A DNA stretch of 64,000 bases, from positions 310,001-374,000 of the forward strand of contig JAWMAR010000892.1 of the NCBI GenBank assembly GCA_036785375.1. The letters run 5' to 3'. The position numbers were made by a program, and so were the translations under genes. Below are positions 18,239-58,268 of the stretch, in pieces. How positions within the stretch are numbered: position 1 is the stretch's first letter; the number at the start of each line of letters is the position of its first letter. Under the pieces are notes generated by a model. It worked only from the letters and a program-made list of their open reading frames with translations. It did not search any database and was not told the origin of the DNA. This DNA comes from Leucoraja ocellata. Its lineage: Eukaryota.

Positions 18239-18239
18239 G

Positions 18240-22617: not shown

Positions 22618-22699
22618 GCCCATTCTTTCTGTCCACAGATGCTGCCTGTCCCGCTGAGTTACTCCAACATTTTGTGTCTACCTCCCAGTCTTTTTAATG

Positions 22700-36904: not shown

Positions 36905-37030
36905 CATGTAGTAAGACATTTCGTAGAAAGAGGCAGAGCAGCAGCAGCACTATCATAGCAGCGATGGCAATCAGCTCAACCCACCAGAAACGTTTGGCTC
37001 TCTTCGACACAACCATTCCCTTCGTATTCT
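36905..37030 (-). CDS. B7-like gene: transmembrane exon
   Basis: Acceptor TCTTTCCTGCTAG, donor G|GTGAGT; 126 nt, phase 1-1; NTKGMVVSKRAKRFWWVELIAIAAMIVLLLLCLFLRNVLLH. Confidence 0.8.
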
Positions 37031-37440
37031 CTAGCAGGAAAGACACCGACACAGAAACATCCACTCAATATTGATGCAAATATTAAAAATCAGAAACCAA
37101 AAAAACTTTCATGCAATTTTCCACAGAATCCTTGGAGGTATGAGGAATACATTGTAGTTTAGTGGTTTAGAGATACAGTGCGGAAACAGGCCCTTGGGCC
37201 CACCGAGTCTGCACCGACCAGCGATCCCCACACATTAGCACTATCCCACACTAGGAACAATTTACATTTATACCAAGCCAATTAACCTGTACGTCTTTAG
37301 AGTGTGGGGGGAAACTGGAAATCTCGGAAAAAACCCCAGCATCTGCAGTTCCTTCACACACAGAACAGTACAGCACAGGAATAGGCCCTTCGGCCCATAA
37401 TGTCTGTGCCAAACACGATGCCATGTTAAACTAATCCCTT

Positions 37441-37740
37441 AGTTTTAGTTTAGTTTAGAGATACAGCGCAGAAACAGGCCCTTCAGCCCAACACGTCCGC
37501 GGTGACCAGTGATCCCCGCACACTAACACACTAGGGACAATTTACAATTATACCAAGCCATTTAGCCTACAAACCTGTACGTCTTTGGAGTGTAGGGGGA
37601 AACTGGAGATCCCGGAGAAAACCAACACAGGTCACAGGGAGAACGTACAAACTCCGTACAGACAGCACCCGTAGTCAGATTTGTCCCCGGGTCTCTGGTG
37701 CTGTGAGGCAGCAACTCTACCGCTGCGCCACTGTGCCACC
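37441..37740 (-). mobile_element. HE1-type SINE ('SINE b', distal recombination partner)
   Basis: Its right part and flank CCCCGGTGTTTCACAACTG are shared with the SINEs at 39283 and 49111. Confidence 0.85.
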
Positions 37741-37892
37741 CCGGTGTTTCACAACTGTGGTATATCAAGCTGTATCACTAAACTAAACTAAACTAAACTT
37801 CCTAAGTATGCTTACATTTGACAACTTCCACTTGTCACCACCATTGTGTAGTAAGGAACTGCAGATGCTGGTTTACACAGAAGACAGACAAA

Positions 37893-38662
37893 ATATAACC
37901 ATGTAACCATATAATAACTATATAACAATTACAGCACAGAAACAGGCCATCTCGACCCTTCTAGTCCGTGCCGAACACATAATCTCCCCTAGTCCCATAT
38001 ACCTGCGCTCAGACCATAACCCTCCATTCCCTTCCCATCCATATAACTATCCAATTTATTTTTAAATGATAAAAACGAACCTGCCTCCACCACCTTCACT
38101 GGAAGCTCATTCCACATCGCTACCACTCTCTGAGTAAAGAAGTTCCCCCTCATGTTACCCCTAAACTTCAGTCCCTTAATTCTCAAGTCATGTCCCCTTG
38201 TTTGAATCTTCCCTACTCTCAGTGGGAAAAGCTTTTCCACGTCAACTCTGTCTATCCCTCTCATCATTTTAAAAACCTCTATCAAGTCCCCCCTTAACCT
38301 TCTGCGCTCCAAAGAATAAAGCCCTAACTTATTCAACCTTTCTCTGTAACTTAGTTGCTGAAACCCAGGCAACATTCTAGTAAATCTCCTCTGTACTCTC
38401 TCTATTTTGTTGACATCCTTCCTATAATTAGGTGACCAAAATTGTACACCATACTGCAGAATTGGCCTCACCAATGCCTTGTACAATTTTAACATTACAT
38501 CCCAACTTTTCTACTCAATGCTCTGATTTATAAAGGCCAGCATACCAAAAGCTTTCTTTACCACCCTATCTACATGAGATTCCACTTTCAGGGAACTATG
38601 CACGGTTATACCCAGATCCCTCTGTTCACCTACATTCTTCAATTCCCTACCATTTACCATGT
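37893..38662 (-). mobile_element. 5'-truncated CR1 copy, same young family as 45780-47408
   Basis: ORF 37989-38495 is near-identical to the C-terminus of 45808-47322; absent at the homologous sites near 48495 and 55155; AAAATAT on both sides. Confidence 0.9.
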
Positions 38663-38791
38663 AAAATATGCTGGAGTAACTTAGCGGGACAGGCAGCATC
38701 TCTGGAGAGAAGGAATGGGTGAGACCCTTCTCCAGACACCACCGCTGTTATTACAAAGAAAAGCTTAAAAACAAAGATCATGAATCTTTAC

Positions 38792-39136
38792 CTGCTATTT
38801 GTAGTGTGACTGTAACTCGTAGAACCACGCTGTTGCCCTCAGTGGGGAGTTTCAACTGAATGAGGCATGTGTACGTGGCTGCGTCGCTCACTCGGAGGTC
38901 GGTGAGAAGAAGGGAGAAGTTGCCGTGTTTGAACTCTGCGGTGAACAGCCTTGCCCTGGTGCCCAGGCCCAATGTGTTGTCCTCTCTGCCCTTATGGAAG
39001 GAATGGATTAACTGAGTGGCCACCTGCCAGTAAACACGAATATCATTGTTGGCTTGTTTCCCCACGTTGGTGTCCAGACAGGGCAGGAGGGCACTTTCAC
39101 CCACAATCCCCGTCACTGTGAGGCTAGACGGCGACA
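38792..39136 (-). CDS. B7-family (ICOSL/CD86-like) IgV exon, copy V3
   Basis: 345 nt, phase 1-1, CAG/GTAAAG splice sites; GIVGESALLPC..IRVYWQ..FKHGNFSLLL..LRVSDAATYTC..VTLQIA. Confidence 0.9.
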
Positions 39137-40479
39137 CTGGGGGTAAAATAAGGACAAAATAATCCCGGGTCTCGTCCACTCCTTCTCCCCAGAGAAGCTG
39201 CCTGTCCCGCTGAGTTACTCCAGCATTTTTTCTATCTTCGGCTTAAACCAGCATCTGTAGTTCCTTCCTACACATTTTTTTTTAGTTTAGAGATACAGCG
39301 CAGAAACAGGTCCTTTGGCCCATCGAGTCCACGCCGACCAGCGATCCCCGCACACTAACACACTAGGGACAATTTACAATTATACCAAGCCATTTAGCCT
39401 ACAAACCTGTACGTCTTTGGAGTGTAGGAGGAAACTGGGGATCCCGGAGAAAACCAACACAGGTCACAGGGAGAACGTACAAACTCCGTACAGACAGCAC
39501 TCGTAGTCAGGATCGTCCCCGGGTCTCTGGTGCTGTGAGGCAGCAACTCTATCGCTGCGCCACCGTGCCACCCCGGTGTTTCACAACTGCGCTGAATGCC
39601 ATTTTAAATTCTCAATGGCCCTTTCACTACTTCCAATTGTTTTACTGCCCTTGATTGCCCAAAATAGGTGAGAGGGGGAAAGTTTAAAGGAGAAGTGAGA
39701 GGTCAGTTTTATTACAGAGTGTGGTGGGCGTCTGGAATGTGCTGCCAGGGGTGGTGGTGGAGGCTGATACGATAGTGGTGTTGAAGAGGCTTTTAGTTAG
39801 GCACAGGGATATGCAGGGAACGGAGGGATATGGATCATGAGAAGGCAGGGGAGATCGGTTTTACTTTGCATCATGCTTGGCACAGACATTGTGGGCCGAA
39901 GGGCCTGTTCTGTGCTGGATCTTCATAAGTTCACAAGTGATAGGAGCAGAATGAGGCCATTCGGCCCATCAAGTCTACTCCGCCACTCAATCATGGCTGA
40001 TCTATCTCTCCCTCCTAAACCCATTCTCCTGCCTTCTCCCCATAACCCCTGACATCTTCTATAACTTTGCCACCAGCTACAGCCGGTGATGGCATAGTTA
40101 TGGGGCGTGAAATAGGAGCTCAACAAATCAAAGAATTATGACAGAACGGAATCGTCATCTCAGTGAAAGACAATACAAGTTTTTTTATTCTATGGATCCC
40201 AGAAATAACAAATAGAAAATACTTAGCAGGTCAGGCAGCATCTATGGGAAGAGAAGTATTCAACGTTTCAGGTTGAATAGCCAAGAGACATTTAGTTTAG
40301 TTTAGTTTAGTTTATTGTCACGTGTATCGAGGTACATTGGAAAGCTGTTTTTGTTGCGTGCTATCCAGCCAGCGGAAAGACTATACATGATTACAATGGA
40401 AGAAATCTCTCAATCCGAAACGTCACCTGTCCCTATTCTCCAGAGATGCTGCCTGATCCGCTGAGTTACTCCAGCAATT

Positions 40480-41410
40480 ACTCATGACTGCGTAGCCGGT
40501 CAAAGTGCGAACTCCATCATCAAGTTCGCTGACGACACCACTGTTGTGGGACGTATCACTGATGGGGACGAGTCAGAGTATAGAAGTGAGATCGACCGAC
40601 TGACCAAATGGTGCTAGCACAATCTCATGGCCCTCAACACCAGCAAAACCAAGGAACTGATTGTGGACTTTGGAAGGGGTAGGATGGGGACCCACAGTCA
40701 CGTTTATATCAACGGGTCGAAGGTGGAAAGGGTCGAGAGCTTCAAATTCCTGGGCGTGCACATCTCTGAAGATCTCTCCTGGTCCGAGAACACTGATGCT
40801 ATTATAAAGAAAGCTCATCAGCGCCTCTACTTCCTGAGAAGATTATGGAGAGTCGGTATGTCAAGGAGGACTCTCTCTAACTTGTACAGGTGCACAGTAG
40901 AGAGCATGCTGACCGGTTGCATCGTGGCTTGGTCTGGCAACTGGAGTGCCCAGGAGCGAAAAAGCAGTAAACACTGCCCAGTCCATCATCGGCTCTGACC
41001 TCCCTACCATCGAGGGGATCTATCGCAGTCGCTGCCCCAAAAAGGCTGGCAGTATCATCAAGGACCCACATCATCCTGGCCACACACTCATCTCCCCGCT
41101 ACCTTCAGGTAGAAGGTACAGGAGCCTGAAGACTGCAACCTCCAGGTTCAGAAACAGCTGCTTCCCCACAGCCATCAGGCTATTGAACTCAACTCAAACA
41201 AAACTCTGAAAATTAATAGCCCATTATCTGTTTATTTGCACTTTATCTGTTTTATTTATTCATGTGTGTATATATTCATACAATGGTATATGTACACACT
41301 GATCTGGTCAGTATTCATGCCTTCTATATTCTGTTGTGCTGAAGCAAAGCAAGAATTTCATTGTCCTATCTGGGACACATGACAATAAACTCTCTTGAAT
41401 CTTGAATCTT
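40480..41410 (+). mobile_element. Rex1-like LINE 3' fragment (duplicated at 50310-51215)
   Basis: IIKFADDTT..LNTSKTKELIVDF..FKFLGVHIS..LPSGRRYRS; tail AATAAACTCTCTTGAATCTTGA. Confidence 0.85.
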
Positions 41411-41602
41411 GAATTTGTGTCTATCTTCAGTGTAAACCAGCATCTGCAGTTCCTTCCTATACATGATTACAATGTACGGATACAGGATAAAGGGAATAAC
41501 CTTTAGTGCAAGATAAAGTCCAGTAAAGTCAACTTGACTTTAAAAGTTTGTTGTCTATATTGAGGGCGTTTTTCAAGGAGAGAGATGTTTTTTTCCCACT
41601 TA

Positions 41603-43114
41603 GAAACATAGAAACATAGAAAATAGGTGCAGGAGTAGGCCATTCGGCCCTTCGAGTCTGCACCGCCATTCAATATGATCATGGCTGATCATCCAACTCA
41701 GTATCCTGTACCTGCCTTCTCTCCATACCCCCTGATCCCTTTAGCCACATCTAACTCCCTCTTAAATATAGCCAATGAACTGGCCTCAACTACCTTCTGT
41801 GGCAGAGAATTCCACAAATTCACCACTCTCTGTGTAATTCTTGGCTATCTTACCCTCGTACCTCATCTTTTCTTCCTGTATTGTCTTTTGGGTTATCTTC
41901 TGTTGTTCTTTAAACATTACCCAATCCTCTTGCTTCCCGCTCATCTTTGCTACGTTATACTTCTTCACTTTAATTTTTATACTAACCCTGACGTCCCTTG
42001 TCAGCCATGGTTGTCCCTTTCTCCCCTTGGAATCTTTCTTCCTCCTAGGAATGAACTGATCCTGCACCTTCTGTATTATTCCAAATAACACCAGCCATTT
42101 TTGTTTCACTGTCATCCCTGCGTGTGTGTCTTTCCAGTCAACTTTGGCCAGCTCCTCCCTCATGGCCTTATAGTTCTCTTTATTCGACTGCAACACTGAC
42201 ACCTCCAATCTACTCATCTCCCTCTCCAATTGTAGATTAAACCTGACCATGTTATGGTCACTGCCTCCTAATGGTTCATTAATCTAATGCCTCCTAATGG
42301 TTCATTACATAACACTAAATCACTTCCCCTCTCACAATTGGCCCTGATTTCCTTCCCTTTAAGTCGAGAATCTTTTGTAATTTTTCCTGTAGCCACTTCC
42401 CCTTCAACATCTTTATACTCCCAATTTGTCAATCCCTCCCCCCCACTATTTATTTTAAACCCACATGTGTAGCCCTGGCAAACCTGCCTGCCAGAATGTG
42501 GATCAGTTTGTTATTTGGATACATTGGATGTTTTAAAAAAATGTTTAGCCTTTTCTTAAGAATGGGACAGATGTTTAGATCTAACAATTGAATTTAGATG
42601 AATTTAATTGATTTCATGACACTGATGAATATTAATTTTTTGTTGGGTATTTACTATTTGTTTTAACGTTACAATAATATTAAAGTTCTGATCTTGGGAA
42701 TATCATATTTTTGAATTTTCAAGGCTGGGTATTTATTACTACCATAGTTTATTACTAGTTTTATTACTAGTTTATTACTAAAATAGAAAATGTTTATTAC
42801 TATTTCCGTCAATTTGCAATAATTTGTAATTAGCTACAATTAGGTGCTTTCATTATATGCTTTAATTTCAGGTCATTCAAATAAGATGTATCATATTTGT
42901 TTCAGAATGCTTCAATCTACAATAACTGAACATTTCATTCAGTTCTCTTAATTTTTAAGAAAGTTATGGGCTTTTGACACTCCTCGATCACAGCTTTTGT
43001 GTTAACTCAATGGGAAAGCAGTAGGGGGGTTTCACGCAAGGTCACTGGGTCATAGGGCTCGACGCACAGAGCCGCTAAATCCAGCTGGAAGACATCCGTC
43101 ACTTCCAGTATATG
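41603..43114. mobile_element. Compound insertion at the IgC2 donor site (CR1 pieces, hAT-like fragment, unassigned ~95 bp)
   Basis: Absent at the homologous site 51402; begins with a (GAAACATA) CR1 tail; 42500-43020 resembles the element at 54060-55078. Confidence 0.75.
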
Positions 43115-43410
43115 TGCGGTAAAGGTTTCAGTTTGTTTCTCCTTCAGCCTGGTGTTGTGAATGCTACATGTGATGCAGTGTACTCCAGCGGACACCCACA
43201 GGAACGAGGTTACGTTGCACAGTCTCTGCGGGGAGCAGTCGGTGTGGGTTGTGGCCGTGCTGTTCGGATCTAGGTTCAGGGACCCGCAGGTCCAGCCCAC
43301 CGCTGGGGCTGGATACCCTCCCCAGGAGGAGCAGGTCAGCCTCAGCACCCCTCCTACACCTTGCTGTCCCTCCGACAGATGCGTACTCAGGGTCGGCTTG
43401 GCAAAGTGAG
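43115..43410 (-). pseudogene. B7-like IgC exon copy C2: open frame but both splice sites lost
   Basis: HFAKPTLS..LTCSSWGGYPAPAVGW..NVTSFLW..ITCSIHN. A ~14-bp deletion removes the TTCCATTCCAG acceptor seen at 51701; the donor is broken by the insertion. Confidence 0.85.
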
Positions 43411-43479
43411 CAGCGTTAACATTAACAAGACAGTGCTGACTGGCTAGCACCCAACAAAAGCTTTTCACTGTTCCTCGAC

Positions 43480-44465
43480 ACACTTTTATTTTACATTTCA
43501 AAATATACTTTCTTCGAGAAATAAATATATCCAACACATGATCCTTACAAGTCTCCATCCAACATTGTCAGAGGCTATACATACATTCAATACTGTTTAC
43601 ACAAGTCACACAATTTTACCCCACACCCTTGCCACTCATGTGGCCCACTTGCATGGAATCCCTTCCCTTATTTTAAGGGGCGTCTCCACCACACCCTGCC
43701 CCCCATGTCCAGCAGCAGAAGGACCCTAGACTGTGGTCCTCCCCCACCGAGCCTTGGCGTTGGCTGCACCGAGCTTCAGTGCGTCCCTTAGCACGTACCA
43801 CTGCAGTCTGCAGCGGGCCAGTCGGCAACATTCCCCAACGGACATCTTGCTCTGCTGGGTGGTCAACAACGCTCGGGCAGACCAAAGAGCGTCTTTCACC
43901 GAGTTGATGACCTTCCAGCAGCTTTCGATGTCAGTCTCTGAATGTGTCCCTGGGAACAGTCCGTAAATCACAGAGTCCTCTGTGACGGAGCTGTTCAGAA
44001 TAAATCATGACAGATGGGTCTCCAATTCTTTATATCCTTCATCTCCCCCTTCTGTTTGTAGATTAGGGTGATGCTGCCCTTCCTCATGGAGTCTGACATG
44101 CTGCCGGCTAGAAGCATGTCGTTGTACATTTCCAGCAGGTCCGGGCCCACCCAGTCTCACAGAGCCGAATACAACTCGGCCGGTAAGCCATCATTTCCAG
44201 GAATTTTACTCGTCAAAGGAACGGATGGAGCCAGTCAGCTCCTCTAGGGTCAGTGGTTGGTCCAGACTCTCCCGCTTGCTGTCCTCCAAGACCTCCGTGA
44301 TGGAGGACAGGAAATTCTGGGAGGCTCTGAATGTGGCGGTGGTGCTGTCCGTGGCCTTTCTGGTGCACAAATCTGTTTAAAAGGTTTTGCAGATCCTCAG
44401 CATGTCCGTCAGCAAGGATGTTACTGAGCCGTCGTCCTCCCTAAGGCTGTTGATCACAGAGCTTT
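43480..44465 (-). mobile_element. Internally deleted Tx1-clade fragment with 3' end (duplicated at 51785-52756)
   Basis: The RT start (PGNDGLPAELY..IKNWRPI) is joined directly to the C-terminus (IYGLFPGTH..LRDALKLGAANAKARWGRTTV*) and 3'UTR. Confidence 0.8.
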
Positions 44466-45745: not shown

Positions 45746-45779
45746 TTCCTAAGTATGCTTACATTTTATAGGTATGTAC

Positions 45780-47408
45780 TGACACTTATGAAAAAGTACT
45801 GACACTTTTGAAAAATATAAAAGTGGATAAGTCTCCAGGTCCTGACAGGATATTCCCTAGGACATTGAGGGAAGTTAGTGTAGAAATAGCCGGGGCTATG
45901 ACAGAAATATTTCAAATGTCATTAGAAACGGGAATAGTCCCCGAGGATTGGCGTACTGCGCATGTTGTTCCATTGTTTAAAAAGGGTTCTAAGAGTAAAC
46001 CTAGCAATTATAGACCTGTTAGTTTGACTTCAGTGGTGGGCAAATTAATGGAAAATATACTTAGAGACAATATATATAAGCATCTAGATAAACAGGGTCT
46101 GATTAGGAACAGTCAACATGGATTTGTGCCTGGAAGGTCATGTTTGACTAATCTTCTTGAATTTTTTGAAGAGGTTACTAGGGAAATTGACGAGGGTAAA
46201 GCAGTGGATGTTGTCTATATGGACTTTAGTAAGGCCTTTGACAAGGTTCCTCATGGAAGGTTGGTTAAGAAGGTTCAACTGTTGGGTATAAATGCAGGAA
46301 TAGCAAGATGGATTCAACAGTGGCTGAATGGGAGAAGCCAGAGGGTAATGGTGGATGGCTGTTTATCGGGTTGGAGGCAGGTGACTAGTGGGGTGCCTCA
46401 GGGATCTGTGTTGGGTCCTTTGTTGTTTGTCATGTACATCAATGATCTGGATGAAGGTGTGGTAAATTGGATTAGTAAGTATGCAGATGATACCAAGATA
46501 GGGGGTGTTGTGGATAATGAAGAGGATTTCCAAAGTCTACAGAGTGATTTAGGCCATTTGGAAAAATGGGCTGAAAGATGGCAGATGGAGTTTAATGCTG
46601 ATAAATGTGAGGTGCTACACCTTGGCAGGACAAATCAAAATAGGACGTACATGGTAAATGTAAGGGAATTGAAGAATACAGTTGAACAGAGGGATCTGGG
46701 TATAACCGTGCATAGTTCCTTGAAGGTGGAATCTCATATAGATAGGGTGGTAAAGAAAGCTTTTGGTATGCTAGCCTTTATAAATCAGAGCATTGAGTAT
46801 AGAAGCTGGGATGTAATGTTAAAATTGTACAAGGCATTGGTGAGACCAAATCTGGAGTATGGGGTACAATTTTGGTCGCCAAATTATAGGAAGGATGTCA
46901 ACAAAATAGAGAGAGTTCAGAGGAGATTTACTAGAATGTTGCCTGGGTTTCAACAACTAAGTTACAGAGATAGGTTGAATAAGTTAGGTCTTTATTCTCT
47001 GGAGCGCAGAAGGTTAAGGGGGGACCTGATAGAGGTCTTTAAAATGATGAGAGGGATAGACAGAGTTGATGTGGACAAGCTTTTCGCTTTGAGAATAGGG
47101 AAGATTCAAACAAGAGGACATGACTTCAGAATTAAGGGACAGAAGTTTAGGGGTAATATGAGGGGGAACTTCTTTACGCAGAGAGTGGTGGCGGTGTGGA
47201 ATGAGCTCCCAGTGGAAGTGGTGGAGGCAGGTTCATTGGTATCATTTAAAAATAAATTGGATAGGCATATGGATGAGAAGGGAATGGAGGGTTATGGTAC
47301 GAGTGCAGGCAGGTGGGACTAAGGGGAAAAAAATTTGTTCGGCATGGACTTGTAGGGCCGAGATGGCCTGTTTCCGTGCTGTAATTGTTATATGGTTATA
47401 TGGTTATA
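45780..47408 (+). mobile_element. Young 5'-truncated CR1 LINE; uninterrupted RT ORF 45808-47322
   Basis: NYRPVSLTS, QHGF, YMDFSKAFDKV, GVPQGSVLGP, KYADD; (TATGGTTA) tail; inserted in the left terminus of the hAT-like element. Confidence 0.93.
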
Positions 47409-48419
47409 TGTTACAAAACTTACCTTCAGCAGCGCTGCAGTTCTGCCACTGGCCGTGTGCGCGACTTTGGCGCCTTTGAGGGGGGAGGGCGGGGTTAAAA
47501 TGCCGTTTTCTCCTGCCTGTCTGAGATATATTTTCTCGGGCTGCAAGCTAATGCTGAAGAATTGATCCGACTGCCTTTCTGTGATTTTTTTTGAAACCGC
47601 GGGACAATTTCAGCGCTGGAGTAAAATAAAAATCCACTTCTAATGCCGTCAACGCCGACAACAAGACAGATCTCCCATACGGGACAGTTAAAGGAAAGCC
47701 GTTTATTTTACATATAAACGTTCTTCTTAGAATTACCTTAATCCAAATTTTACGTTGCGAAAATGTGATTTAGGCCCCATACGAACCGGCAGTGTTTTTC
47801 CTGCCGATATGGGGTTTAAATTCACAGCTAACCGCAACGTTCCAATCGATCGCATTCCACAAAATCCCACTCACAAGATGATTTAAATGGCCATTAATTT
47901 ACAGGAATTTAACACTAAATTCCTTCCATTTGGCCTATAAATTCATGACAATGAGATTTAAAAATCATGTTATATTGTGAATTCTTGTGTGAATGTTATT
48001 TGGACAGACTATTTAAAATTCTTAAGAAATGGATAGATGTTGAGATCTAGTAATTGAATTTTGTAATTAGGTAACTAACTAATTATATGCTTTAATTTCA
48101 GGTCATCCAAGTAAGATTGTTTCATATTTGTTTCAGAATGCTTCAATCTATAATAACTGAAAATTTATTTCAGTTCTCTTAATTTTTAAGAAAGTTATGG
48201 GCTTTTGACTGTCCTCAATCACAGCTTTTGTGTTAAGTCAATGGAAAAGCAATTGGGAACAAGATGCTAACTTCCGAGTATGAAAATGGCCATATCTTTT
48301 TTAATATTGAAGATATGAAAGTGAATTAGGTGTCAAATTAAACTTCTTTTTATGCTTTATCTGATGGGATCAATTGCAGACTTGATTTTTAAAATCTCAA
48401 AAATGTTGTAACATTGCTA
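47408..48419. mobile_element. Non-autonomous hAT-like DNA element (~1 kb), CR1-interrupted copy
   Basis: Homologous to 54061-55079; its left terminus lies at 45769. Confidence 0.7.
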
Positions 48420-48623
48420 CATTTGACAACTTCCACTTGTCACCACCATTGTGTAGGAAGGAACTGCAGATGCTGGTTTACACAGAAGACAGACATAAAA
48501 TGCTGGAGTAACTTAGCGGGACAGGCAGCATCTCTGGAGAGAAGGAATGGGTGAGACCCTTCTCCAGACACCACCGCTGTTATTACAAAGAAAAGCTTAA
48601 AAACAAAGATCATGAACCTTTAC

Positions 48624-48968
48624 CTGCTATTTGTAGTGTGGCTGTAACTCGTAGAACCACGCTGTTGCCCTCAGTGGGGAGTTTCAACTGAATGAGGCAT
48701 GTGTACGTGGCTGCGTCGCTCACTCGGAGGTCGGTGAGAAGAAGGGAGAAGTTGCCGTGTTTGAACTCTGCGGTGAACAGCCTTGCCCTGGTGCCCAGGC
48801 CCAATGTGTTGTCCTCTCTGCCCTTATGGAAGGAATGGATTAACCGAGTGGCCACCTGCCAGTAAACACGAATATCATTGTTGGCTTGTTTCCCCACGTT
48901 GGTGTCCAGACAGGGCAGGAGGGCACTTTCACCCACAATCCCCGTCACTGTGAGGCTAGACGGCGACA
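48624..48968 (-). CDS. B7-family IgV exon, copy V2
   Basis: 345 nt, intact splice sites and frame; two amino-acid differences from V1/V3 (ATRLIH, VTATLQ). Confidence 0.9.
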
Positions 48969-51403
48969 CTGGGGATAAAATAAGGACAAAATAAGCCCGG
49001 GTCTCGTCCACTCCTTCTCCCCAGAGAAGCTGCCTGTCCCGCTGAGTTACTCCAGCATTTTGTCTATCTTCGACTTAAACCAGCATCTGCAGTTCCTTCC
49101 TACACATTTTGTTTAGTTTAGAGATACAGCGCGGAAACAGGCCCTTTGGCTCACCGAGTCCACGCCGACCAGCGATCCCCGCACACTAACACACTAGGGA
49201 CAATTTACAATTATACCAAGCCATTTAGCCTACAAACCTGTACGTCTTTGGAGTGTAGGAGGAAACTAGGGATCCCGGAGAAAGCCAACACAGGTCACAG
49301 GGAGAACGTACAAACTCCGTACAGACAGCACTCGTAGTCAGGATCATCCCCGGGTCTCTGGTGCTGTGAGGCAGCAACTCTATCGCTGCGCCACCGTGCC
49401 ACCCCGGTGTTTCACAACTGCGCTGAATGCCATTTTAAATTCTCAATGGCCCTTTCACTACTTCCAATTGTTTTACTACCCTTGAGTGCCCAAAATAGGT
49501 GAGAGGGGGAAAGTTTAAAGGAGAAGTGAGAGGTCAGTTTTATTACAGAGTGTGGTGGGCGTCTGGAATGTGCTGCCAGGGGTGGTGGTGGAGGCTGATA
49601 CGATAGTGGTGTTGAAGAGGCTTTTAGTTAGGCACAGGGATATGCAGGGAACAGAGGGATATGGATCATGAGAAGGCACGGGAGATCGGTTTTACTTTGC
49701 ATCATGCTTGGCACAGACATTGTGGGCTGAAGGGCCTGTTCTGTGCTGGATCTTCATAAGTTCACAAGTGATAGGAGCAGAATGAGGCCATTTGGCCCAT
49801 CAAGTCTACTCCGCCACTCAATCATGGCTGATCTATCTCTCCCTCCTAAACCCATTCTCCTGCCTTCTCCCCATAACCCCTGACATCTTCTATAACTTTG
49901 CCACCAGCTACAGCCGGTGATGGCATAGTTATGGGGCGTGAAATAGGAGCTCAACAAATCAAAGAATTATGACAGAACGGAACCGTCATCTCAGTGAAAG
50001 ACAATACAAGTTTTTTTATTCTATGGATCCCAGAAATAACAAATAGAAAATACTTAGCAGGTCAGGCAGCATCTATGGGAAGAGAAGTATTCAACGTTTC
50101 AGGTTGAATAGCCAAGAGACATTTAGTTTAGTTTAGTTTAGTTTATTGTCACGTGTATCGAGGTACATTGGAAAGCTGTTTTTGTTGCGTGCTATCCAGC
50201 CAGCGGAAAGACTATACATGATTACAATGGAAGAAATCTCTCAATCCAAAACGTCACCTGTCCCTATTCTCCAGAGATGCTGCCTGATCCGCTGAGTTAC
50301 TCCAGCAATTACTCATGACTGCGTAGCCGGTCAAAGTGTGAACTCCATCATCAAGTTCGCTGACGACACCACTGTTGTGGGACGTATCACTGATGGGGAC
50401 GAGTCAGAGTATAGAAGTGAGATCGACCGACTGACCAAATGGTGCCAGCACAATCTCATGGCCCTCAACACCAGCAAAACCAAGGAACTGATTGTGGACT
50501 TTGGAAGGGGTAGGATGGGGATCCACAGTCACGCTTATAATGGTGGAAAGGGTCGAGAGCTTCAAATTACTGGGCGTGCACATCTCTGAAGATCTCTCCT
50601 GGTCTTTCTTATAAAGAAAGCTCATCAGCGCCTCTACTTCCTGAGAAGATTATGGAGAGTCGGTATGTCAAGGAGGACTCTCTCTAACTTCTACAGGTGC
50701 ACAGTAGAGAGCATGCTGATCGGTTGCATCGTGGCTTGGTCTGGCAACTGGAGTGCCCAGGAGCGAAAAAGCAGTAAACACTGCCCAGTCCATCATCGGC
50801 TCTGACCTCCCTACCATCGAGGGGATCTATCGCAGTCGCTGCCCCAAAAAGGCTGGCAGTATCATCAAGGACCCACATCATCCTGGCCACACACTCATCT
50901 CCCCGCTACCTTCAGGTAGAAGGTACAGGAGCCTGAAGACTGCAACGTCCAGGTTCAGAAACAGCTGCTTCCCCACAGCCATCAGGCTATTGAACTCAAC
51001 TCAAACAAAACTCTGAACATTAATAGCCCATTATCTGTTTATTTGCACTTTATCTGTTTTATTTAATCATGTGTGTATATATTCATACACTGGTATATGT
51101 ACACACTGATCTGGTCAGTATTCATGCCTTCTATATTCTGTTGTGCTGAAGCAAAGCAAGAATTTCATTGTCCTATCTGGGACACATGACAATAAACTCT
51201 CTTGAATCTTGAATTTGTGTCTATCTTCAGTGTAAACCAGCATCTGCAGTTCCTTCCTCTACATGATTACAATGTATGGATACAGGATAAAGGGAATAAC
51301 CTTTAGTGCAAGATAAAGTCCAGTAAAGTCAACTTGACTTTAAAAGTTTGTTGTCTATATTGAGGGCGTTTTTCAAGGAGAGAGATGTTTTTTTCCCACT
51401 TAC

Positions 51404-51700
51404 TTGCGGTAAAGGTTTCAGTTTGTTTCTCCTTCAGCCTGGTGTTGTGAATGCTACAGGTGATGCAGTGTACTCCAGCAGACACCCACAGGAACGAGGT
51501 TACGTTGCACAGTCTCTGCGGGGAGCAGTCGGTGTGGGTTGTGGCCGTGCTGTTCGGATCTAGGTTCAGGGACCCGCAGGTCCAGCCCACCGCTGGGGCT
51601 GGATACCCTCCCCAGGAGGAGCAGGTCAGCCTCAGCACCCCTCATGCACCTTGCTGTTCCTCCGACAGATGCGTACTCAGGGTCGGCTTGGCAAAGTGGG
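51404..51700 (-). pseudogene. B7-like IgC exon copy C1: splice sites intact, in-frame TGA
   Basis: 297 nt, phase 1-1 (TTCCATTCCAG / GTAAGT); the codon at 51642-51644 is TGA where C2 has GGA. Confidence 0.88.
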
Positions 51701-54060
51701 CTGGAATGGAACAGCAGCGTTAACATTAACAAGACAGCGCTGACTGGCTAGCACCCAACAAAAGCTTTTCACTGTTCCTCGACACACTTTTATTTTACAT
51801 TTCAAAATATACTTTCTTCGAGAAATAAATATATCCAACACATGATCCTTACAAGTCTCCATCCAACATTGTCGGAGGCTATACATACATTCAATACTGT
51901 TTACACAAATCACACAATTTTACCCCACACCCTTGCCACTCATGTGGCCCACTTGCATGGAATCCCTTCCCTTATTTTAAGGGGCGTCTCCACCACACCC
52001 TGCCCCCCATGTCCAGCAGCAGAAGGACCCTAGACTGTGGTCCTCCCCCACCGAGCCTTGGCGTTGGCTGCACCGAGCTTCAGTGCGTCCCTTAGCACGT
52101 ACTCCTGCAGTCTGCAGCGGGCCAGTCGGCAACATTCCCCGACGGACAACTCGCTCCGCTGGGTGGTGAGCAACGCTCGGGCAGACCAAAGAGCGTCTTT
52201 CACCGAGTTGATGACCTTCCAGCAGCACTCGATGTCAGTCTCTGAATGTGTCCCTGGGAACAGACCGTAAATCACAGTCCTCTGTGACGGAGCTGTTGAG
52301 AATAAATCGTGACAGAGATGGGTCTCCAATTCTTTATATCCTTCATCTCCCCCTTCTGCTTGTAGATTAGGGTAATGCTGCCCTTCCTCATGGAGTCTGA
52401 CATGCTGCCTGCTAGAAGCATGTCGTTGTACATTTCCAGCAGGTCCAGGCCCACCCAGTCCCACAGAGCCGAATACAACTCGGCCGGTAAGCCATCATTT
52501 CCAGGAGTTTTACTCGTCAAAGGAACGGATGGAGCCAGTCAGCTCCTCTAGGGTCAGTGGTTGGTCCAGACTCTCCCGCTTGCTGTCCTCCAAGACCTCC
52601 GTGATAGAGGACAGGAAATTCTGGGAGGCGGTGGTGCTGTCCGTGGCCTTTCTGGTGCACAAATCTGTTTAAAAGGTTTTGCAGATCCTCAGCATGTCCG
52701 TCAGTAAGGATGTTACCGAGCCGTCCTCCTCTCTAAGGCTGTTGATCACAGAGCTTTGGTTTAAACCAAAGATAGACACAAACTAGCAGGAGGAATCAGT
52801 GTCAGGAGGAATCAGAGGGATTGTGTGTCTATCTTTATGTACTTGTATCCCACGGTCTCTCAGTTCTAAGAATCTCCCTTTCATTCACTGTGTACCTGCT
52901 GGCGTAGCTTTGGGTTAAATGTACAAATTGTTGCATTCCATTGAATTAAATTGCAGCTGAGTTTGAGTTTAGTTTATTGTCACGTGTACTGAGGTACAAG
53001 GAAAAGAGTTCTGTAGAGAGCTCTGCCATTCGCTTGCCCATTTCCCCAGTTGAACTTGACCCTGGTGCAACTATAAACTACCTTCCTCACTGTCCACCAC
53101 ACCTACAATTTTGGTTCCATCTACACACTTGATCATCTATATTCTCTTCCACACTGCAAACAAAGACCAGCCAGTCCAAATCGGTGCCATTTTTAAATTG
53201 GTGAAGAGAGAAGATTGTTCATGACATGGTTTTTTTGTGTCTGGAGCATCAGAGACAGATTGAAGATCTGTTAGGAAGTAAATAACATTCCAAGAGCTTT
53301 AGTGTTGACAGTCAAACCCTTTATCCCCAGGGTGGGAATGTCAAAGACTAGATGGCGTAGCTTTCAGGTGAGAGGGGCAAAGTTTAAAGGAGATGTGAAG
53401 AACAAGTTGTGTCACACAGACACAGGGTGGTGGGTGCCTGGAACACGCTGCCAGGGGTGGTGGTGGAGGCAGATACGACAGTGGTGTTTGACATGGTAGT
53501 GCAGGGATTAGATCGATGTGGATCAAGTGCAGGCAGATGAGATTAGTTTAGCTGGGTATCATGTTTGCTGGGCCGAAAGGTCCATTCCTGTGCTGTACTG
53601 TTCTATGTTCCACCTATCAGCTACTGTTGGGTCCTGAAGAATATCTGCAGACGATGACGATCTTGAGTGTACGGAGCAACGATCAGGGAAACGAGTCGGT
53701 CACAACCATTACGAGTAATATAGAAGGAACAAGTCCATTGGGCAGCACGGTGGCGCAGCGGTAGAGTTGCTGTCTCACAGCGCCAGAGACCCAGGTTCGA
53801 TCCTGACTACGGTCACTGTCTGTACGGAGTTTGTACGTTCTCCCCGTGACCTGCGTGGGTTTTCTCTGGAAGCTCCGGTTTCCTCCCACATTCCAAAGTT
53901 GTACAGGTTTGTAGGTTAATGGGCTTGGTATAAATGTGAAATTGTCCCTAGTATTATTGTGCGGGGATTGCTGGTCGGCATGGACTCGGTGGGCCAAAGG
54001 GCCTGTTTCCAAGCTGTATCACTAAACTAAACTAAATTTCCTAAGTATGCTTACATTTTA

Positions 54061-55079
54061 TAGGTATGTTACAAAACTTACCTTCAGCGGTGCTGCAGTT
54101 CTGCCACTGGCCGTGTGCGCGACTTTGGTGCCTTTGAGGGGGGAGGGCGGGGTTAAAATGCCGTTTTCTCCTGCCTGTCTGAGATATATTTTCTCGGGCT
54201 GCAAGCTAATGCTGAAGAATTGTTCCGACCGCCCTTCTGTGAATTTTTTTTTAAACCGCGGGACAATTTCAGCGCTGGAGTAAAATAAAATTCCACTGCT
54301 AATGCCGTCAACGCCGACAACGGGACGGATCTCCCGTACGGGACAGTTAAAGGTAAGCCGTTTATTTTACATATAAACGTTCTTCTTAGAATTACCTTAA
54401 TCCAAATTTTACGTTGCGAAAATGTGATTTAGGCCCCATACGAACCGGCAGTGTTTTTCCTGACGATATGGGGTTTAAATTCACAGCTAACCGCAACGTT
54501 CCAATCGATCGCATTCCACAAAATCCCACTCACAAGATGATTTAAATTGCCATTAATTTACAGGAATTTAACACTAAATTCCTTCCATTTGGCCTATAAA
54601 TTCATGACAATGAGATTTAAAAATCATGTTATATTGTGAATTCTTGTGTGAATGTTATTTGGACACAGACTATTTAAAATTCTTAAGAAATGGATAGATG
54701 TTGAGATCTAGTAATTGAATTTTGTAATTAGGTAACTAACTAATTATATGCTTTAATTTCAGGTCATCCAAGTAAGATTGTTTCATATTTGTTTCAGAAT
54801 GCTTCAATCTATAATAACTGAAAATTTATTTCAGTTCTCTTAATTTTTAAGAAAGTTATGGGCTTTTGACTGTCCTCAATCACAGCTTTTGTGTTAAGTC
54901 AATGGAAAAGCAATTAGGAACAAGATGCTAACTTCCGAGTATGAAAATGGCCATATCTTTTTTAATACTGAAGATATGAAAGTGAATTAGGTGTCAAATT
55001 AAACTTCTTTTTATGCTTTATCTGATGCGATAAATTGCAGACTTGATTTTTAAAATCTCAAAATGTTGTAACATTGCTA
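54061..55079. mobile_element. Non-autonomous hAT-like DNA element (~1 kb)
   Basis: Imperfect TIRs TAGGTATGTTACAAAA / TGTTGTAACATTGCTA; CATTT(T/G)A duplicated at the flanks; empty site CTTACATTTGACAAC at 37811. Confidence 0.7.
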
Positions 55080-55283
55080 CATTTGACAACTTCCACTTGT
55101 CACCACCATTGTGTAGGAAGGAACTGCAGATGCTGGTTTACACAGAAGACAGACATAAAATGCTGGAGTAACTCAGCGGGACAGGCAGCATCTCTGGAGA
55201 GAAGGAATGGGTGAGACCCTTCTCCAGACACCACCGCTGTTATTACAAAGAAAAGCTTAAAAACAAAGATCATGAACCTTTAC

Positions 55284-55628
55284 CTGCTATTTGTAGTGTG
55301 ACTGTAACTCGTAGAACCACGCTGTTGCCCTCAGTGGGGAGTTTCAACTGAATGAGGCATGTGTACGTGGCTGCGTCGCTCACTCGGAGGTCGGTGAGAA
55401 GAAGGGAGAAGTTGCCATGTTTGAACTCTGCGGTGAACAGCCTTGCCCTGGTGCCCAGGCCCAATGTGTTGTCCTCTCTGCCCTTATGGAAGGAATGGAT
55501 TAACTGAGTGGCCACCTGCCAGTAAACACGAATATCATTGTTGGCTTGTTTCCCCACGTTGGTGTCCAGACAGGGCAGGAGGGCACTTTCACCCACAATC
55601 CCCGTCACTGTGAGGCTAGACGGCGACA
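55284..55628 (-). CDS. B7-family IgV exon, copy V1
   Basis: 345 nt, phase 1-1, intact; protein identical to V3 within the exon. Confidence 0.9.
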
Positions 55629-55769
55629 CTGGGGATACAATAAGGACAAAATAATCCCGGGTCTCGTCCACTCCTTCTCCCCAGAGAAGCTGCCTGTCCC
55701 GCTGAGTTACTCCAGCATTTTGTCTATCTTCGGCTTAAACCAGCATCTGTAGTTCCTTCCTACACATTT

Positions 55770-56068
55770 TGTTTAGTTTAGAGATACAGCACGGAAACAG
55801 GCCCTTTGGCCCATCGAGTCCACGCCGACCAGCGATCCCCGCACACTAACACTATCCTACATACACTAGGGACAATTTACAATTGTTACCGAAGCCAATT
55901 AACCTACTAACATGTATGTCTTTGGAGTGTGAGAGGAAACCGGAGCACCCGGAGAAAAGCCACACGGGTCATGAGGAGAAGATACAAACTCCGTACACAC
56001 AGCACCCATAGTCAGGATTGAACACGGGTCTCTGGCGCTGCGAGGCAGTAACTCTACCGTGGCTCCAC
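55770..56068 (-). mobile_element. HE1-type SINE ('SINE a', proximal recombination partner)
   Basis: Its left part matches the SINEs at 39283 and 49111; its right part does not. Confidence 0.85.
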
Positions 56069-56477
56069 CCTCTTTTTCTGAAGAAAAAGTATAACATACA
56101 ATATTTCTAAGGAACGCAACTATTGTGTTATGGCAGCACTGCAGCTCAAAGTCCCCCTCTTCATCTCCCAGGGTTATTGCGGGTCCGTCTGTCCTAGAGT
56201 CACGGCTGCCACTAAGTCTGGGCACTCGCAGTCGAGAACCTTCTGGCCACTGGCAATCCCTGAGGACTGGGATCTGAAACTATAACTTTGTCACTCACAT
56301 GGAGGAAGGCTGAAATGACTGAGGCTTGGATTGAGTCCTCTCCGGGCGTGCTTCCCACAGGCTGGGGTTGCCCCACCACTGGTGTACGTGTGGGACAGGC
56401 TGTCGACAGACAGATGAAGCATAACTGCCTTTTCTCAGACACAACAGAGGTGATCCGTGCATCTTTTTAGAGTTACA

Positions 56478-57042
56478 GAGGGTGGTGCAGCGGTAGAGTT
56501 GCTGACTTACAGCGCCAGAGACCCAGGTCTGGTCCTGACTATGGGTGCTGCCTGTACGGAGTTTGCACGTTCTCCCCGTGACCACGTGGATTTTCTCCGG
56601 GTGCTCCGGATTCCTCCCACACTCCAAAGATTCAGGTTTGTAGGTTAATTGGCATCTATAAAGTGTAAATTGTCCCTAGTATGTAGGTTGGTGCTAGTAT
56701 GCGGGGTGATCGCTGGTCTGTGTGGACTCGGTGGGCCAAAACATACACTGTATCTCTAAACTAAACATGAAATCAAACCCCTTGGTCCACAGAGCCCACA
56801 CCGACCATCGATCACCCATTCACACTAGTTCCATGTTATCCCACTTTCCCATCCACTCCGTACACATTAGGGGTAATTTTACAGAGGGCCAATTAACCTA
56901 CAAACCCGCACGTCTTTGGGATGTGGGAGGAAACCGGAGCACCCGGAGAAAATCCACATGGTCACATGGAGAACGTGCAAACTCCACACAGGCAACACCC
57001 AAGGTCATGGTCGAACCCGGGTCTCTGGCGCTGTGAGGCAGT
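56478..57042. mobile_element. Two HE1-type SINEs, tail to tail
   Basis: Plus copy 56478-56766, minus copy 56780-57042. Confidence 0.8.
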
Positions 57043-57098
57043 GGCTTTAGTTCATGAAACTAATGGACCTTTTCAGAGAAGTGGAAATGAATTCTTAC

Positions 57099-57160
57099 CT
57101 GTTCTGCAACACAAAAGCAGCAAAGCACATTGGAGCAGCCCAGCCACCCGTCTTGTCACC
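57099..57160 (-). CDS. B7-like gene: signal-peptide exon
   Basis: Acceptor TGTGTTGCAG, donor CAG|GTAAGA; 62 nt, phase 2 to 1; VTRRVAGLLQCALLLLCCRT joins in frame to V1. Confidence 0.75.
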
Positions 57161-57219
57161 CTGCAACACAGTGAATGCATTGATATTTCAACGGTGAACC
57201 CGTTTACAAGTTACTGACA

Positions 57220-57640
57220 ATAGCCACACGCAAATTGGAGGAATAGCATCTCATATTTCACTTGGGCAGCTTACAACCAGCGGTATGAATATTGATTTCT
57301 CTAATTTCAAGTAAGCCTTGCATCCCCTCTCTCTCTCTCCATCCCTCCTCCACCCTAGTTATCCTGCTAGTTTCACTGTTTGTATCCCTTTGTTATCACC
57401 CCCTCCACAGCCAACAATGGACCATTGTGGGCTCTTTGGCTGACGGTCCCAGCTCTGATTTCTTCTGTACATTTTCATACCTCCAGTTTCCCTCTTCCCT
57501 GACTCTCAGTCTGAAGAAGGGTCTCCACCCGAAACATCACCCATTCCTTCTCTCCACAGATGCTGCCTGATCTGCTGAGTTACTCCAGCTATTTGTGTCT
57601 GTCTTCAGTTTAAACCAGCATCTGTAGTTCTGTCCAACAC
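57220..57640 (+). mobile_element. Penelope-like element 3' fragment (GIY-YIG C-terminus plus terminal repeat)
   Basis: Degenerate RKLEE-HLIFHLGSLQP-GMNIDFSNFK*, then the CTGAAGAAGGGTC..CCCGAAAC terminal segment, which recurs as short copies across the window. Confidence 0.7.
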
Positions 57641-58254
57641 ATCTCAACTTCCTTATCTTTAGTCAGACTTTAATGGACTTTATCTTGCACTAAACATTAT
57701 TCCCTTTATCCTGTACCTGCATCTGACGGCTTGGTTGTAATCACATATAGACTTCCTGCTGATGGAATAACAAAAACAGTTTGCATTGTATCTTGGTAAA
57801 CGTGACAATAATAAACTAAACCAAAGTTTATTTTTTAGTTTAGTTTAGTGATACAGCGTATAAACATTTCCTTCAGCTCACCGAGTCCATGCGACCAGTG
57901 ATCCCCGCACACTAACACTAAGCTACACACACACACACACACGAGGGATCATTTCCACGCTGTATCTCTAAACTAAACTAAACACCATACAAACAGCACC
58001 CACAGTCAGGAACTCGGGTCTCTGGCGCTGTGAGGCAGCTACTCAAATTGAATAAGGAAATGCTGCAGAGACACATCAGGTGAGGCCGGGTGTGAAGCGG
58101 TTAATGATTCAGGTTGACGGCTTTTCAACAGAACCGAAAGATGACTTCATCTCCTGGAAACTTTCCCAGCACTTTCAGCACAGCTTGAACCAGAGGAGCC
58201 ATACACGGCCTTCCCTCTCCCCAGCCGCTGCCCGGCCCCATCACACTCACTCAC

Positions 58255-58268
58255 TCTCCTGGATCCAC
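58255..58268 (-). CDS. B7-like gene: candidate 14-nt first coding exon with GTG in place of ATG
   Basis: GTG GAT CCA GGA GA|GTGAGT, phase 2, compatible with the leader exon; abuts a SINE-derived cluster at 58269-58690. Confidence 0.45.

What the first reader, a model, noticed from the sequence alone, without database searches (positions are those of the whole stretch)
36905..58268. B7/ICOSL-like gene with triplicated V-C module in which every IgC exon is disabled by a different lesion while all IgV exons stay intact
Seen (minus): leader, V1, C1 (TGA at 51642), V2, C2 (acceptor deleted and donor disrupted), V3, C3 absent (~4.6-kb deletion at ~37760), TM. The V exons total 1035 nt with no disabling change, and all Ig exons are phase 1-1, so skipping keeps frame. 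Predicted products are membrane V-V-V-TM, or, if C1 is included, a secreted V plus ~19 aa (or NMD). Known: B7 members are V-C, V-C-V-C (CD276) or V-C-V (HHLA2), and the V domain binds receptor. Inference: selection for a multivalent V-only costimulatory ligand or decoy. Decay of a young pseudogene is the alternative.
Basis: partly seen in the sequence, partly recalled or inferred. Interest (0 to 1): 0.85.

Follow-up and report, generated by a model that had tools for sequence, protein, structure and literature searches.

The report
Decaying skate B7-H3-like gene copy
This is a recently amplified, transposon-riddled copy of a skate B7-H3 (CD276)-like immune-ligand gene that looks like a null or decaying copy rather than an engineered "V-only" ligand, because intact relatives are annotated and the only spliced RNA seen joins V to an undamaged C exon.

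Summary
The sequence facts largely hold. On the minus strand there are three near-identical 345-nt IgV exons, all intact. C1 carries TGA at 51644-51642. C2 has lost its acceptor, and a LINE sits at its donor. There is no third C exon. A TM exon follows, and every exon is phase 1-1. The leader lies at 57180-57099, not 58268.

The gene is closest to CD276/B7-H3, not ICOSL. It is 99-100% identical to RefSeq "CD276 antigen-like" proteins of the little skate. Those models come from three other contigs: one canonical L-V-C-TM-tail gene and two L-V-C-V-TM models with an intact C.

Two spliced contigs from likely RNA runs join the V donor exactly to the C acceptor and read GGA where the window has TGA. 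With its splice sites intact, C1 should therefore be included, which gives a premature stop.

The copies differ by only about 1-2%. Intact V exons are expected by chance (P about 0.3-0.9), and the lesion pattern is not significant (P 0.05-0.13).

My verdict is a young null or decaying copy made by SINE-mediated unequal crossing-over. Selection for a V-V-V ligand is unsupported but not excluded. The scan also noted this stretch as s1-885693.

The parts
57099..57180 (-). Leader (signal-peptide) exon. ATG at 57180, an internal acceptor at about 57161/57160 used by some RefSeq models, donor GT at 57098-57097, phase 1.
   Evidence: One search gives the sequence. In one search, P0153 residues 1-27 match at 100% and P0001 residues 6-26 at 100%.
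55766..56069 (.). SINE_a upstream of V1. The crossover point of the duplication lies between 55814 and 55885.
   Evidence: In some searches, divergence from copies B and C jumps from about 3-5% to about 20% past 55865, while B and C stay alike.
55284..55628 (-). IgV exon V1, 345 nt, phase 1-1, intact.
   Evidence: Pfam V-set 2.9e-11. RNA-type contigs cover 55284-55631.
51404..51700 (-). IgC exon C1, 297 nt, phase 1-1, splice sites intact, in-frame TGA at 51644-51642.
   Evidence: In one search, spliced contigs enter this exon exactly at 51700 but read G at 51644.
49107..49420 (.). Hybrid SINE upstream of V2, at the junction between units.
48624..48968 (-). IgV exon V2, intact, with two amino-acid differences from V1 and V3 (Q>R, V>A).
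45778..47406 (+). LINE insertion in the V2-C2 intron with a 504-aa reverse-transcriptase ORF (45808-47322).
   Evidence: Pfam RVT_1 1.4e-34.
43115..43408 (-). IgC exon C2. The frame is open, but a 14-bp deletion removed the acceptor and the first 2 exon bases, and the donor is lost.
   Evidence: Pfam C2-set_3 7.7e-8.
41603..43114 (-). 1512-bp LINE-type insertion abutting the last base of C2, separating it from the old donor.
39275..39589 (.). Hybrid SINE upstream of V3.
38792..39136 (-). IgV exon V3, intact, same protein as V1. The intron after it reads GKDS-stop, as at the end of RefSeq isoform P0151.
37896..38663 (-). 5'-truncated LINE inserted 128 nt downstream of V3. Unit intron sequence resumes at 37893-37809.
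37443..37808 (.). SINE_b with its simple-repeat end. The junction of the roughly 5.6-kb C3 loss lies at 37808/37809.
36905..37030 (-). Stalk and transmembrane exon, 126 nt, phase 1-1. Reading through its donor reaches a stop at 36854-36852, as in RefSeq models P0001 and P0153.

Best explanation
The locus is one copy, either an allele or a very recent paralogue, of an elasmobranch-specific B7 gene closest to CD276/B7-H3. It most likely comes from the little skate or a very close relative.

Inferred history: unequal crossing-over between a SINE upstream of the V exon and a SINE downstream of the C exon amplified the 6.66-kb V-C unit. The last C exon was lost in a roughly 5.6-kb deletion, probably already in a V-C-V-TM ancestor. 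This copy then gained an extra unit, two LINE insertions, a 14-bp deletion at the C2 acceptor and a G>T nonsense change in C1.

Expected behaviour: C1 keeps the splice sites that transcripts of this family use, so the default mRNA is leader-V1-C1(stop)-V2-V3-TM. That message should be degraded by nonsense-mediated decay, or at most give a secreted V1 stub. As assembled, this copy is therefore a null or decaying gene. Function rests with intact relatives, the V-C-TM-tail gene and possibly the V-C-V-TM genes.

Shown: the anatomy, the family, the relatives, and V-to-C splicing with an intact C. Inferred: the order of events, inclusion of C1 in this copy, decay of its mRNA, and the species.
For: - The tandem units are 96-98% alike, with copy-specific transposon insertions. 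The crossover lies inside hybrid SINEs.
- V and C are both closest to CD276 among solved structures. The intact paralogue P0152 scores 5e-17 against CD276, 6e-13 against ICOSL and 3e-10 against CD80.
- RefSeq little-skate proteins from three other contigs are 99-100% identical exon by exon. P0152 and P0158 are L-V-C-TM-tail. P0001 and P0153 are L-V-C-V-TM and have G where the window has the stop.
- P0151 ends in the V3-type intron read-through, so a last V without a following C is shared with another locus.
- Two of two spliced contigs (X15, 572 nt; X16, 633 nt) join 55284 to 51700 and read GGA, not TGA.
- The cytoplasmic-tail exon of P0152 is not found in the window.
- All 15 of 15 word-indexed homologues are elasmobranch, and most are single V-C proteins of 246-350 aa.
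- There is no robust exon-specific conservation, and the statistics are not significant.
Against: - All lesions fall in C exons and none in V exons. By length alone the chance is 0.05 for three hits and 0.13 for two.
- V exons vary less than their immediate non-SINE flanks, 3 of 345 columns against 9 of 264 (p=0.037).
- RefSeq models with V spliced directly to TM, and horn-shark models with V-V-C, show that V-rich forms are at least predicted in this lineage.
- No read was shown to come from this copy, so its silence or decay is not demonstrated.
- The TGA was not checked in independent DNA. Run X7 had no coverage there.
- I could not fetch the RefSeq loci, so allele versus paralogue is unresolved.
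Confidence: 0.6

Rival explanations
1. The locus is functional in the population, and the TGA is a private or polymorphic null allele, or a base error. Other alleles would encode an L-V-C-V-V-TM or L-V-C-V-TM membrane protein with a working C1, as RefSeq models for sister loci.
For: - C1 differs from the C domain of P0153 and P0001 only by the stop.
- RNA-type contigs have V1-type letters at 55417 and GGA at the stop position.
- The leader and V1 are 100% identical to P0153.
Against: - The RNA contigs also differ from the window at 51658 and 55463, so they may come from another locus.
- This copy carries extra transposon damage and lacks the tail exon.
- No DNA run was shown to lack the TGA.
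Confidence: 0.2
2. One reading: selection is removing C exons to make a multivalent V-V-V-TM ligand or decoy, or a secreted V1. C1 would be skipped in the mature mRNA.
For: - All exons are phase 1-1, so skipping keeps the frame.
- Lesions hit only C exons.
- There is a weak excess conservation of V against its immediate flanks.
- V-to-TM joins appear in RefSeq models, V-V-C in horn shark, and a V-TM fragment in Chiloscyllium.
Against: - No V-to-V or V-to-TM joint was seen among the records listed. The lists were truncated, so this is weak.
- The C1 splice sites are intact and are the ones in use.
- The V substitutions are 2 nonsynonymous to 1 synonymous, and the divergence is too small to show constraint.
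- An intact canonical paralogue exists.
Confidence: 0.07
3. Assembly artefact: two haplotypes or sister loci of a V-C-V-TM gene were stitched in tandem. The three-unit array, or one of its lesions, would then not exist on a single chromosome.
For: - RefSeq holds near-identical genes on small separate contigs of 76, 222 and 518 kb. This is typical of unresolved haplotigs or repeats.
- The region is repeat-rich.
Against: - The units differ by 1-4% and by unit-specific LINE insertions and a deletion.
- The hybrid SINE junctions are coherent.
- No N runs occur in the window.
Confidence: 0.1

Closest known systems
CD276 / B7-H3, including the human 4Ig (V-C-V-C) form
   Same: - It is the best solved-structure match for V, for C and for the intact skate paralogue.
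- The layout is one Ig domain per phase-1 exon, with a type I TM.
- The V-C exon pair is duplicated in tandem inside the gene. The review PMC9597993 describes human 4IgB7-H3 as two identical V-C pairs. I read passages of it through the find mode.
   Different: - Alignments show only about 30-35% identity.
- Orthology was not tested, and source names vary between CD276-like, ICOS ligand-like and BTNL2.
- Here the duplicated C exons are broken or missing, the unit is triplicated, the duplication is independent and SINE-mediated, and no tail exon is found.
RefSeq 'CD276 antigen-like' genes of Leucoraja erinacea (XP_055487413.1, XP_055487388.1, XP_055522047.1/048.1)
   Same: Exon-by-exon identity is 99-100%, with the same leader, V, C and TM exons and the same junction codons.
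   Different: - The window has a third unit, a stop in C1, a dead C2, and F/H instead of S/N in the TM exon.
- None of the four proteins is encoded exactly by the window.
HHLA2 (B7-H7), a V-C-V B7 member
   Same: The V-C-V ectodomain order matches that predicted for sister loci P0001 and P0153.
   Different: - HHLA2 does not appear among the 60 best of 77 solved-structure matches.
- The resemblance is in architecture only, and it arose here by loss of a C exon.
Young duplicated pseudogenes and null alleles in copy-number-variable immune gene clusters
   Same: There is recent tandem and segmental duplication, transposon insertions, a nonsense change, loss of a 3' exon, and intact paralogues.
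   Different: Loss of expression of this copy is not shown. The lesions spare the receptor-binding-type V exons.

Membership tests
B7 family (CD276/B7-H3-like branch) | N-terminal IgV domain with the canonical Cys, Trp and D-x-A-x-Y-x-C pattern | tested here: met
   Pfam V-set 2.9e-11, above its cut-off. The best solved match is CD276.
B7 family (CD276/B7-H3-like branch) | Membrane-proximal IgC (C2-set) domain that is intact in the product | tested here: not met
   The exon sequence is of the right kind: C2-set_3 7.7e-8 and CD80-like C2-set 1.5e-6, with CD276 as the best match. In this copy, however, C1 has a stop, C2 cannot be spliced, and C3 is absent.
B7 family (CD276/B7-H3-like branch) | One domain per exon, all in phase 1 | tested here: met
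   Leader, V (three times), C1 and TM are all phase 1.
B7 family (CD276/B7-H3-like branch) | Type I transmembrane segment followed by a cytoplasmic tail exon | tested here: inconclusive
   The TM exon is present. The tail exon of paralogue P0152 is not found anywhere in the window. Read-through gives a 17-residue tail, as in RefSeq P0001 and P0153.
B7 family (CD276/B7-H3-like branch) | Orthology to CD276 by synteny and phylogeny | not tested
   Only E-value ranking was done: CD276 5e-17, ICOSL 6e-13, CD80 3e-10. No neighbouring genes were identified, and no tetrapod sequences were fetched.
4Ig-B7-H3-type exon-pair duplication | Tandem duplication of the V-C exon pair within one gene | tested here: met
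   The period is 6658 nt and the units are 96-98% alike.
4Ig-B7-H3-type exon-pair duplication | All duplicated exons are retained and expressed in one reading frame | tested here: not met
   C1 has a stop, and C2 lacks acceptor and donor. RNA-type contigs show only a first V-to-C join.
Pseudogene or null copy | Disabling lesion in an exon that normal splicing includes | tested here: met
   TGA lies 238 nt before the C1 donor. The same V donor and C acceptor are used in 2 of 2 spliced contigs.
Pseudogene or null copy | An intact paralogue or allele carries the function | tested here: met
   P0152 and P0158 are L-V-C-TM-tail, and P0001 and P0153 have an intact C. This holds at annotation level only.
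Pseudogene or null copy | This copy is not expressed, or its mRNA is degraded | not testable with these tools
   The single read-laying run is used. The contigs seen do not carry this copy's letters at 51644 or 51658.

The most novel reading that the evidence does not exclude
In skates and sharks this CD276-like lineage may be actively remodelling the number of its receptor-binding V domains. SINE-mediated unit amplification followed by C-exon loss would give V-C-V in little skate sister loci, V-V-C in horn shark, and V-C(dead)-V-V here. The window would then be a copy-number allele caught on the way to a V-rich membrane ligand or decoy. C1-skipped V-V-V-TM, or a secreted V1, would be real products under selection.
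Probability: 0.1. Interest if true: 0.6.

Novelty: new member of a known kind. Interest (0 to 1): 0.3.

Why it matters
If the ordinary reading holds, the window is a clean, datable example of how SINEs drive exon-unit amplification and loss in an immune-ligand gene. It runs independently parallel to the human 4Ig-B7-H3 duplication. It also warns annotators that near-identical CD276-like loci in the little skate differ in domain number.

If the bold reading held, it would show natural selection tuning the valency of a B7 ligand by discarding its C domains. That would interest comparative immunologists and people who engineer checkpoint ligands. The present evidence does not favour it.

Tried and rejected
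- **ICOSL-like label.** Rejected in favour of CD276-like. ICOSL ranks behind CD276 for V (5.6e-4 against 1.4e-7 for the 2Ig chain) and for the intact paralogue.
- **Leader at 58268.** Rejected.
- **LINE piece 37896-38663 as the cause of the C3 loss.** I first thought so and then rejected it. Unit intron sequence resumes after the LINE, and the junction lies at 37808/37809.
- **Strong V-exon conservation.** The first tests gave p=0.002 and p=6e-9. I rejected them as an artefact of the non-homologous SINE part beyond the crossover.
- **Short transcript-derived proteins with V-V or V-TM joins.** Nothing found at E below 1e-20 among proteins of 63-200 aa. This is a blank with little weight.
- **Long multi-V hits P0003-P0011.** These are automated lungfish and teleost models named perlecan-like, hemicentin-like or BTNL2. 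They are not informative.
- **Literature.** Three searches listed no paper on this elasmobranch gene lineage. I saw only the listings, plus passages of PMC9597993. Supplementary files were not consulted.
- **Notes of the scan.** Searches by words and by sequence gave nothing on paralogues.
Full report
**Anatomy**

A self-comparison of 33-64 kb shows a tandem repeat with a period of 6658 nt. Segment 47407-49395 matches 54065-56069 at 95.8%. Segment 38664-41602 matches 48497-51402 at 97.6%. Segment 43115-45777 matches 51405-54069 at 97.0%. The window has no N runs.

Read on the minus strand, each unit holds one IgV exon and one IgC exon. The three V exons are 55628-55284, 48968-48624 and 39136-38792. 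Each is 345 nt with a CAG acceptor and a GTAAAG donor, in phase 1-1. They differ at 3 of 345 columns: Q/R, a silent His codon, and V/A.

- **C1 (51700-51404).** It has both splice sites and an in-frame TGA at 51644-51642.
- **C2 (43408-43115).** Its frame is open. A 14-bp deletion removes the acceptor and two exon bases. A 1512-bp LINE-type insertion (41603-43114) begins at the position of the donor.
- **Other Ig exons.** tblastn with the V, C and TM translations finds 3, 2 and 1 places, and nothing else with E below 0.5. There is therefore no third C exon.
- **TM exon (37030-36905).** It is phase 1-1. Reading through its donor reaches a stop at 36854-36852.
- **Leader.** The true leader is at 57180/57160-57099.

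**How the array arose**

The SINE upstream of V1 (55766-56069) is about 80% like the SINE before the TM exon (37443-37757). The SINEs upstream of V2 and V3 are about 93% like the TM-side SINE.

In a three-way alignment, copies B and C stay alike throughout. Copy A diverges sharply beyond a point between 55814 and 55885. This is the signature of unequal crossing-over between two SINEs. It agrees with the scan's other note on this stretch, s1-885693.

After V3 the unit intron runs for 128 nt. It is then interrupted by a 5'-truncated LINE (38663-37896) and resumes for 85 nt (37893-37809, 96.5% like 55159-55075). It then abuts the simple-repeat end of the TM-side SINE. The loss of the third C is therefore a roughly 5.6-kb deletion with its junction at 37808/37809. 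The LINE is a separate event.

**Family**

I searched the exons apart and did not join them.

- The V exon matches Pfam V-set at 2.9e-11. The C2 frame matches C2-set_3 at 7.7e-8 and CD80-like C2-set at 1.5e-6.
- Among solved structures the best match for V is CD276: 2e-17 for the 4Ig chain and 1.4e-7 for a 2Ig chain. PD-L1 follows at about 1e-5, CD86 at 4e-5 and ICOSL at 5.6e-4.
- CD276 is also best for C: 4.4e-10 for the 4Ig chain and 5.7e-4 for a 2Ig chain. BTN2A1 follows at 0.014.

**Relatives**

A full-library phmmer search with the V exon found 765 proteins at E up to 1e-3 and 12 at E up to 1e-30. The best hit, P0001 (99% identity), is XP_055522047.1, 'CD276 antigen-like isoform X1 [Leucoraja erinacea]'.

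Its 90% cluster has four little-skate proteins from three contigs of 222, 518 and 76 kb.

- P0152, and isoform P0158 (sequence printed), are canonical leader-V-C-TM plus a 17-residue tail from a further exon.
- P0001 and P0153 are leader-V-C-V-TM and end in the read-through after the TM exon.
- P0151 ends in GKDS-stop. That is the read-through of the V3-type intron, whereas V1 and V2 give GKGS.

Mapped on the window, P0153 matches the leader and V1 at 100%. Comparing its sequence with the C1 translation, the only real difference in C is Gly in place of the stop. None of the four proteins is encoded exactly by the window: the second V and the TM exon differ at a few residues.

From this I infer that the window is little skate or a very close relative. 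It is either an allele or a very recent paralogue of those loci. The V-then-TM arrangement without a last C predates this copy. The tail exon of P0152 is not found in the window.

A word-indexed search with P0152 gave 15 hits, all 15 from elasmobranchs. They are named CD276-like, ICOS ligand-like, BTNL2-like or uncharacterized, and most are single V-C proteins of 246-350 aa. Horn-shark models have V-V-C with two identical V domains. P0152 against solved structures scores 5e-17 for CD276 2Ig, 6e-13 for ICOSL, 3e-10 for CD80 and 1.5e-9 for PD-L1.

**RNA evidence**

The V1 exon is held by 20 of the 24 listed runs. Six of the holders are guessed to be RNA. I laid X15, X16, X17 (RNA guesses) and X7 (kind unknown, another organism label) on 51350-55700. 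All four runs are kept as contigs.

- **Spliced contigs.** X15 record 1 (572 nt) lies on 55631-55284 and then directly on 51700-51538. X16 record 8 (633 nt) lies on 55631-55284 and then on 51700-51526. These are V-donor to C-acceptor joins at exactly the predicted bases. The three extra matching bases before V fit the end of the leader exon, which is my inference.
- **Letters in those contigs.** Both read, on the minus strand, G instead of T at 51644, giving GGA rather than TGA. Both read G instead of A at 51658. They agree with C1 at 51646 and with V1 at 55417, and they have one private change at 55463.
- **What this shows.** They come from a copy or allele with an intact C, at least over the first 163-175 nt of the C exon. 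They do not come from the window sequence as assembled.
- **X17.** It holds a V piece with the V2/V3 letter at 55417.
- **X7.** It has no coverage at the stop. Its V contig has depth 642, against 228-330 for the six listed intron pieces (records 23-28), which suggests more than one V copy there.
- **Limits.** No V-to-V or V-to-TM joint appears among the records shown. However, 797 joints and 1237 loose ends were not listed, so that absence is weak. The exact exon joins argue that X15 and X16 are RNA, although the tool marks this as a guess.

**Selection or decay?**

Raw comparisons suggested that V exons are far more conserved than non-exon sequence. That came from the SINE part beyond the crossover, which is not homologous. 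Without it the counts are as follows.

| Comparison | Exon differences | Non-exon differences | p |
|---|---|---|---|
| A against B | 3/345 | 28/1440 | 0.25 |
| A against C | 1/345 | 10/351 | 0.011 |
| B against C | 2/345 | 15/579 | 0.04 |
| B against C, all exons | 7/639 | 85/4916 | 0.32 |

As variable columns in the three-way alignment, the exon has 3/345 and the non-SINE flanks 9/264 (p=0.037). Yet 900 nt of the A-B intron (54365-55264) differ at only about 0.8%, the same as the exon.

The V changes are two nonsynonymous to one synonymous. The C changes are three nonsynonymous, including the stop, to two synonymous.

Only 29 of 1026 possible single changes in a V exon make a stop. The chance of no nonsense change is 0.92 for the 3 changes seen and 0.71 for 12 changes. 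The chance of no indel is about 0.39 at the intronic rate. The chance that all lesions fall in C by length alone is 0.048 for three hits and 0.13 for two. The pattern is suggestive at most and was noticed after the fact.

**Mechanism I commit to**

This is a young, unstable copy made by SINE-mediated unequal crossing-over and now decaying. C1 keeps the splice sites that the family uses, so the default message carries a stop 238 nt before the C1 donor, with further exon junctions downstream. By the established rule for nonsense-mediated decay, such a message should be degraded. At most, V1 plus 19 residues would be secreted.

Function lies with intact relatives. My confidence is about 0.6.

**What is known**

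The human 4Ig form of B7-H3 consists of two identical V-C pairs. I read passages of the review PMC9597993 for this. Three literature searches listed nothing on this elasmobranch lineage.

RefSeq already annotates the sister loci. I therefore rate the finding as a new member of a known kind, of modest interest.

**Limits**

- Read laying allowed one call, so the TM side and the stop in independent DNA were not examined.
- Supplementary files were not seen.

Noticed in passing
window 45808-47322 (+): There is an uninterrupted 504-aa reverse-transcriptase ORF (Pfam RVT_1 1.4e-34) in a LINE inserted in the V2-C2 intron. A 5'-truncated copy that is 90.9% alike lies inverted at 37896-38663. The family may have been active recently.
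   Followed up: partly
window 55000-55291, and equivalents at 48340-48630 and 38664-38790: The short repeat just downstream of each V exon is extremely abundant in the RNA-type runs. Summed contig depth is 44,000-90,000 in bin 55146-55291, against 3-7 on the V exon, and there are many loose ends at 55110-55214. It appears to be a highly transcribed SINE-like element.
   Followed up: no
P0151 (XP_055522048.1), residues 1-15, against window 55191-55150, 48531-48490, 57560-57601, 22639-22683: The N-terminus of one RefSeq isoform of the sister locus matches SINE-like repeat copies in the window at about 70%. That predicted alternative first exon is probably repeat-derived.
   Followed up: no
P0155, P0002, P0156, P0157 (Heterodontus francisci): Horn-shark 'CD276 antigen-like' models carry two V domains that are identical at the protein level, followed by one C (V-V-C-TM). 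Isoform X5 is V-C-TM. This is either an independent, very recent V-exon duplication or a false duplication in that assembly.
   Followed up: no
window 35777-36647 (-): Two adjacent retroelement-like ORFs of 109 and 178 aa lie directly downstream of the TM exon. They have no Pfam family above cut-off. A transposon sits where a cytoplasmic-tail exon might be expected.
   Followed up: partly
run X7 on window 55301-55700: A contig from a run labelled as another organism carries a mosaic of V1-type and V2-type letters: V2-type at 55638 and 55655, V1-type at 55417 and 55505. This hints at allelic shuffling or gene conversion among V copies.
   Followed up: no
window 18000-22000: This stretch has 63% G+C, far above its neighbours at 29-50%. 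I did not examine it.
   Followed up: no
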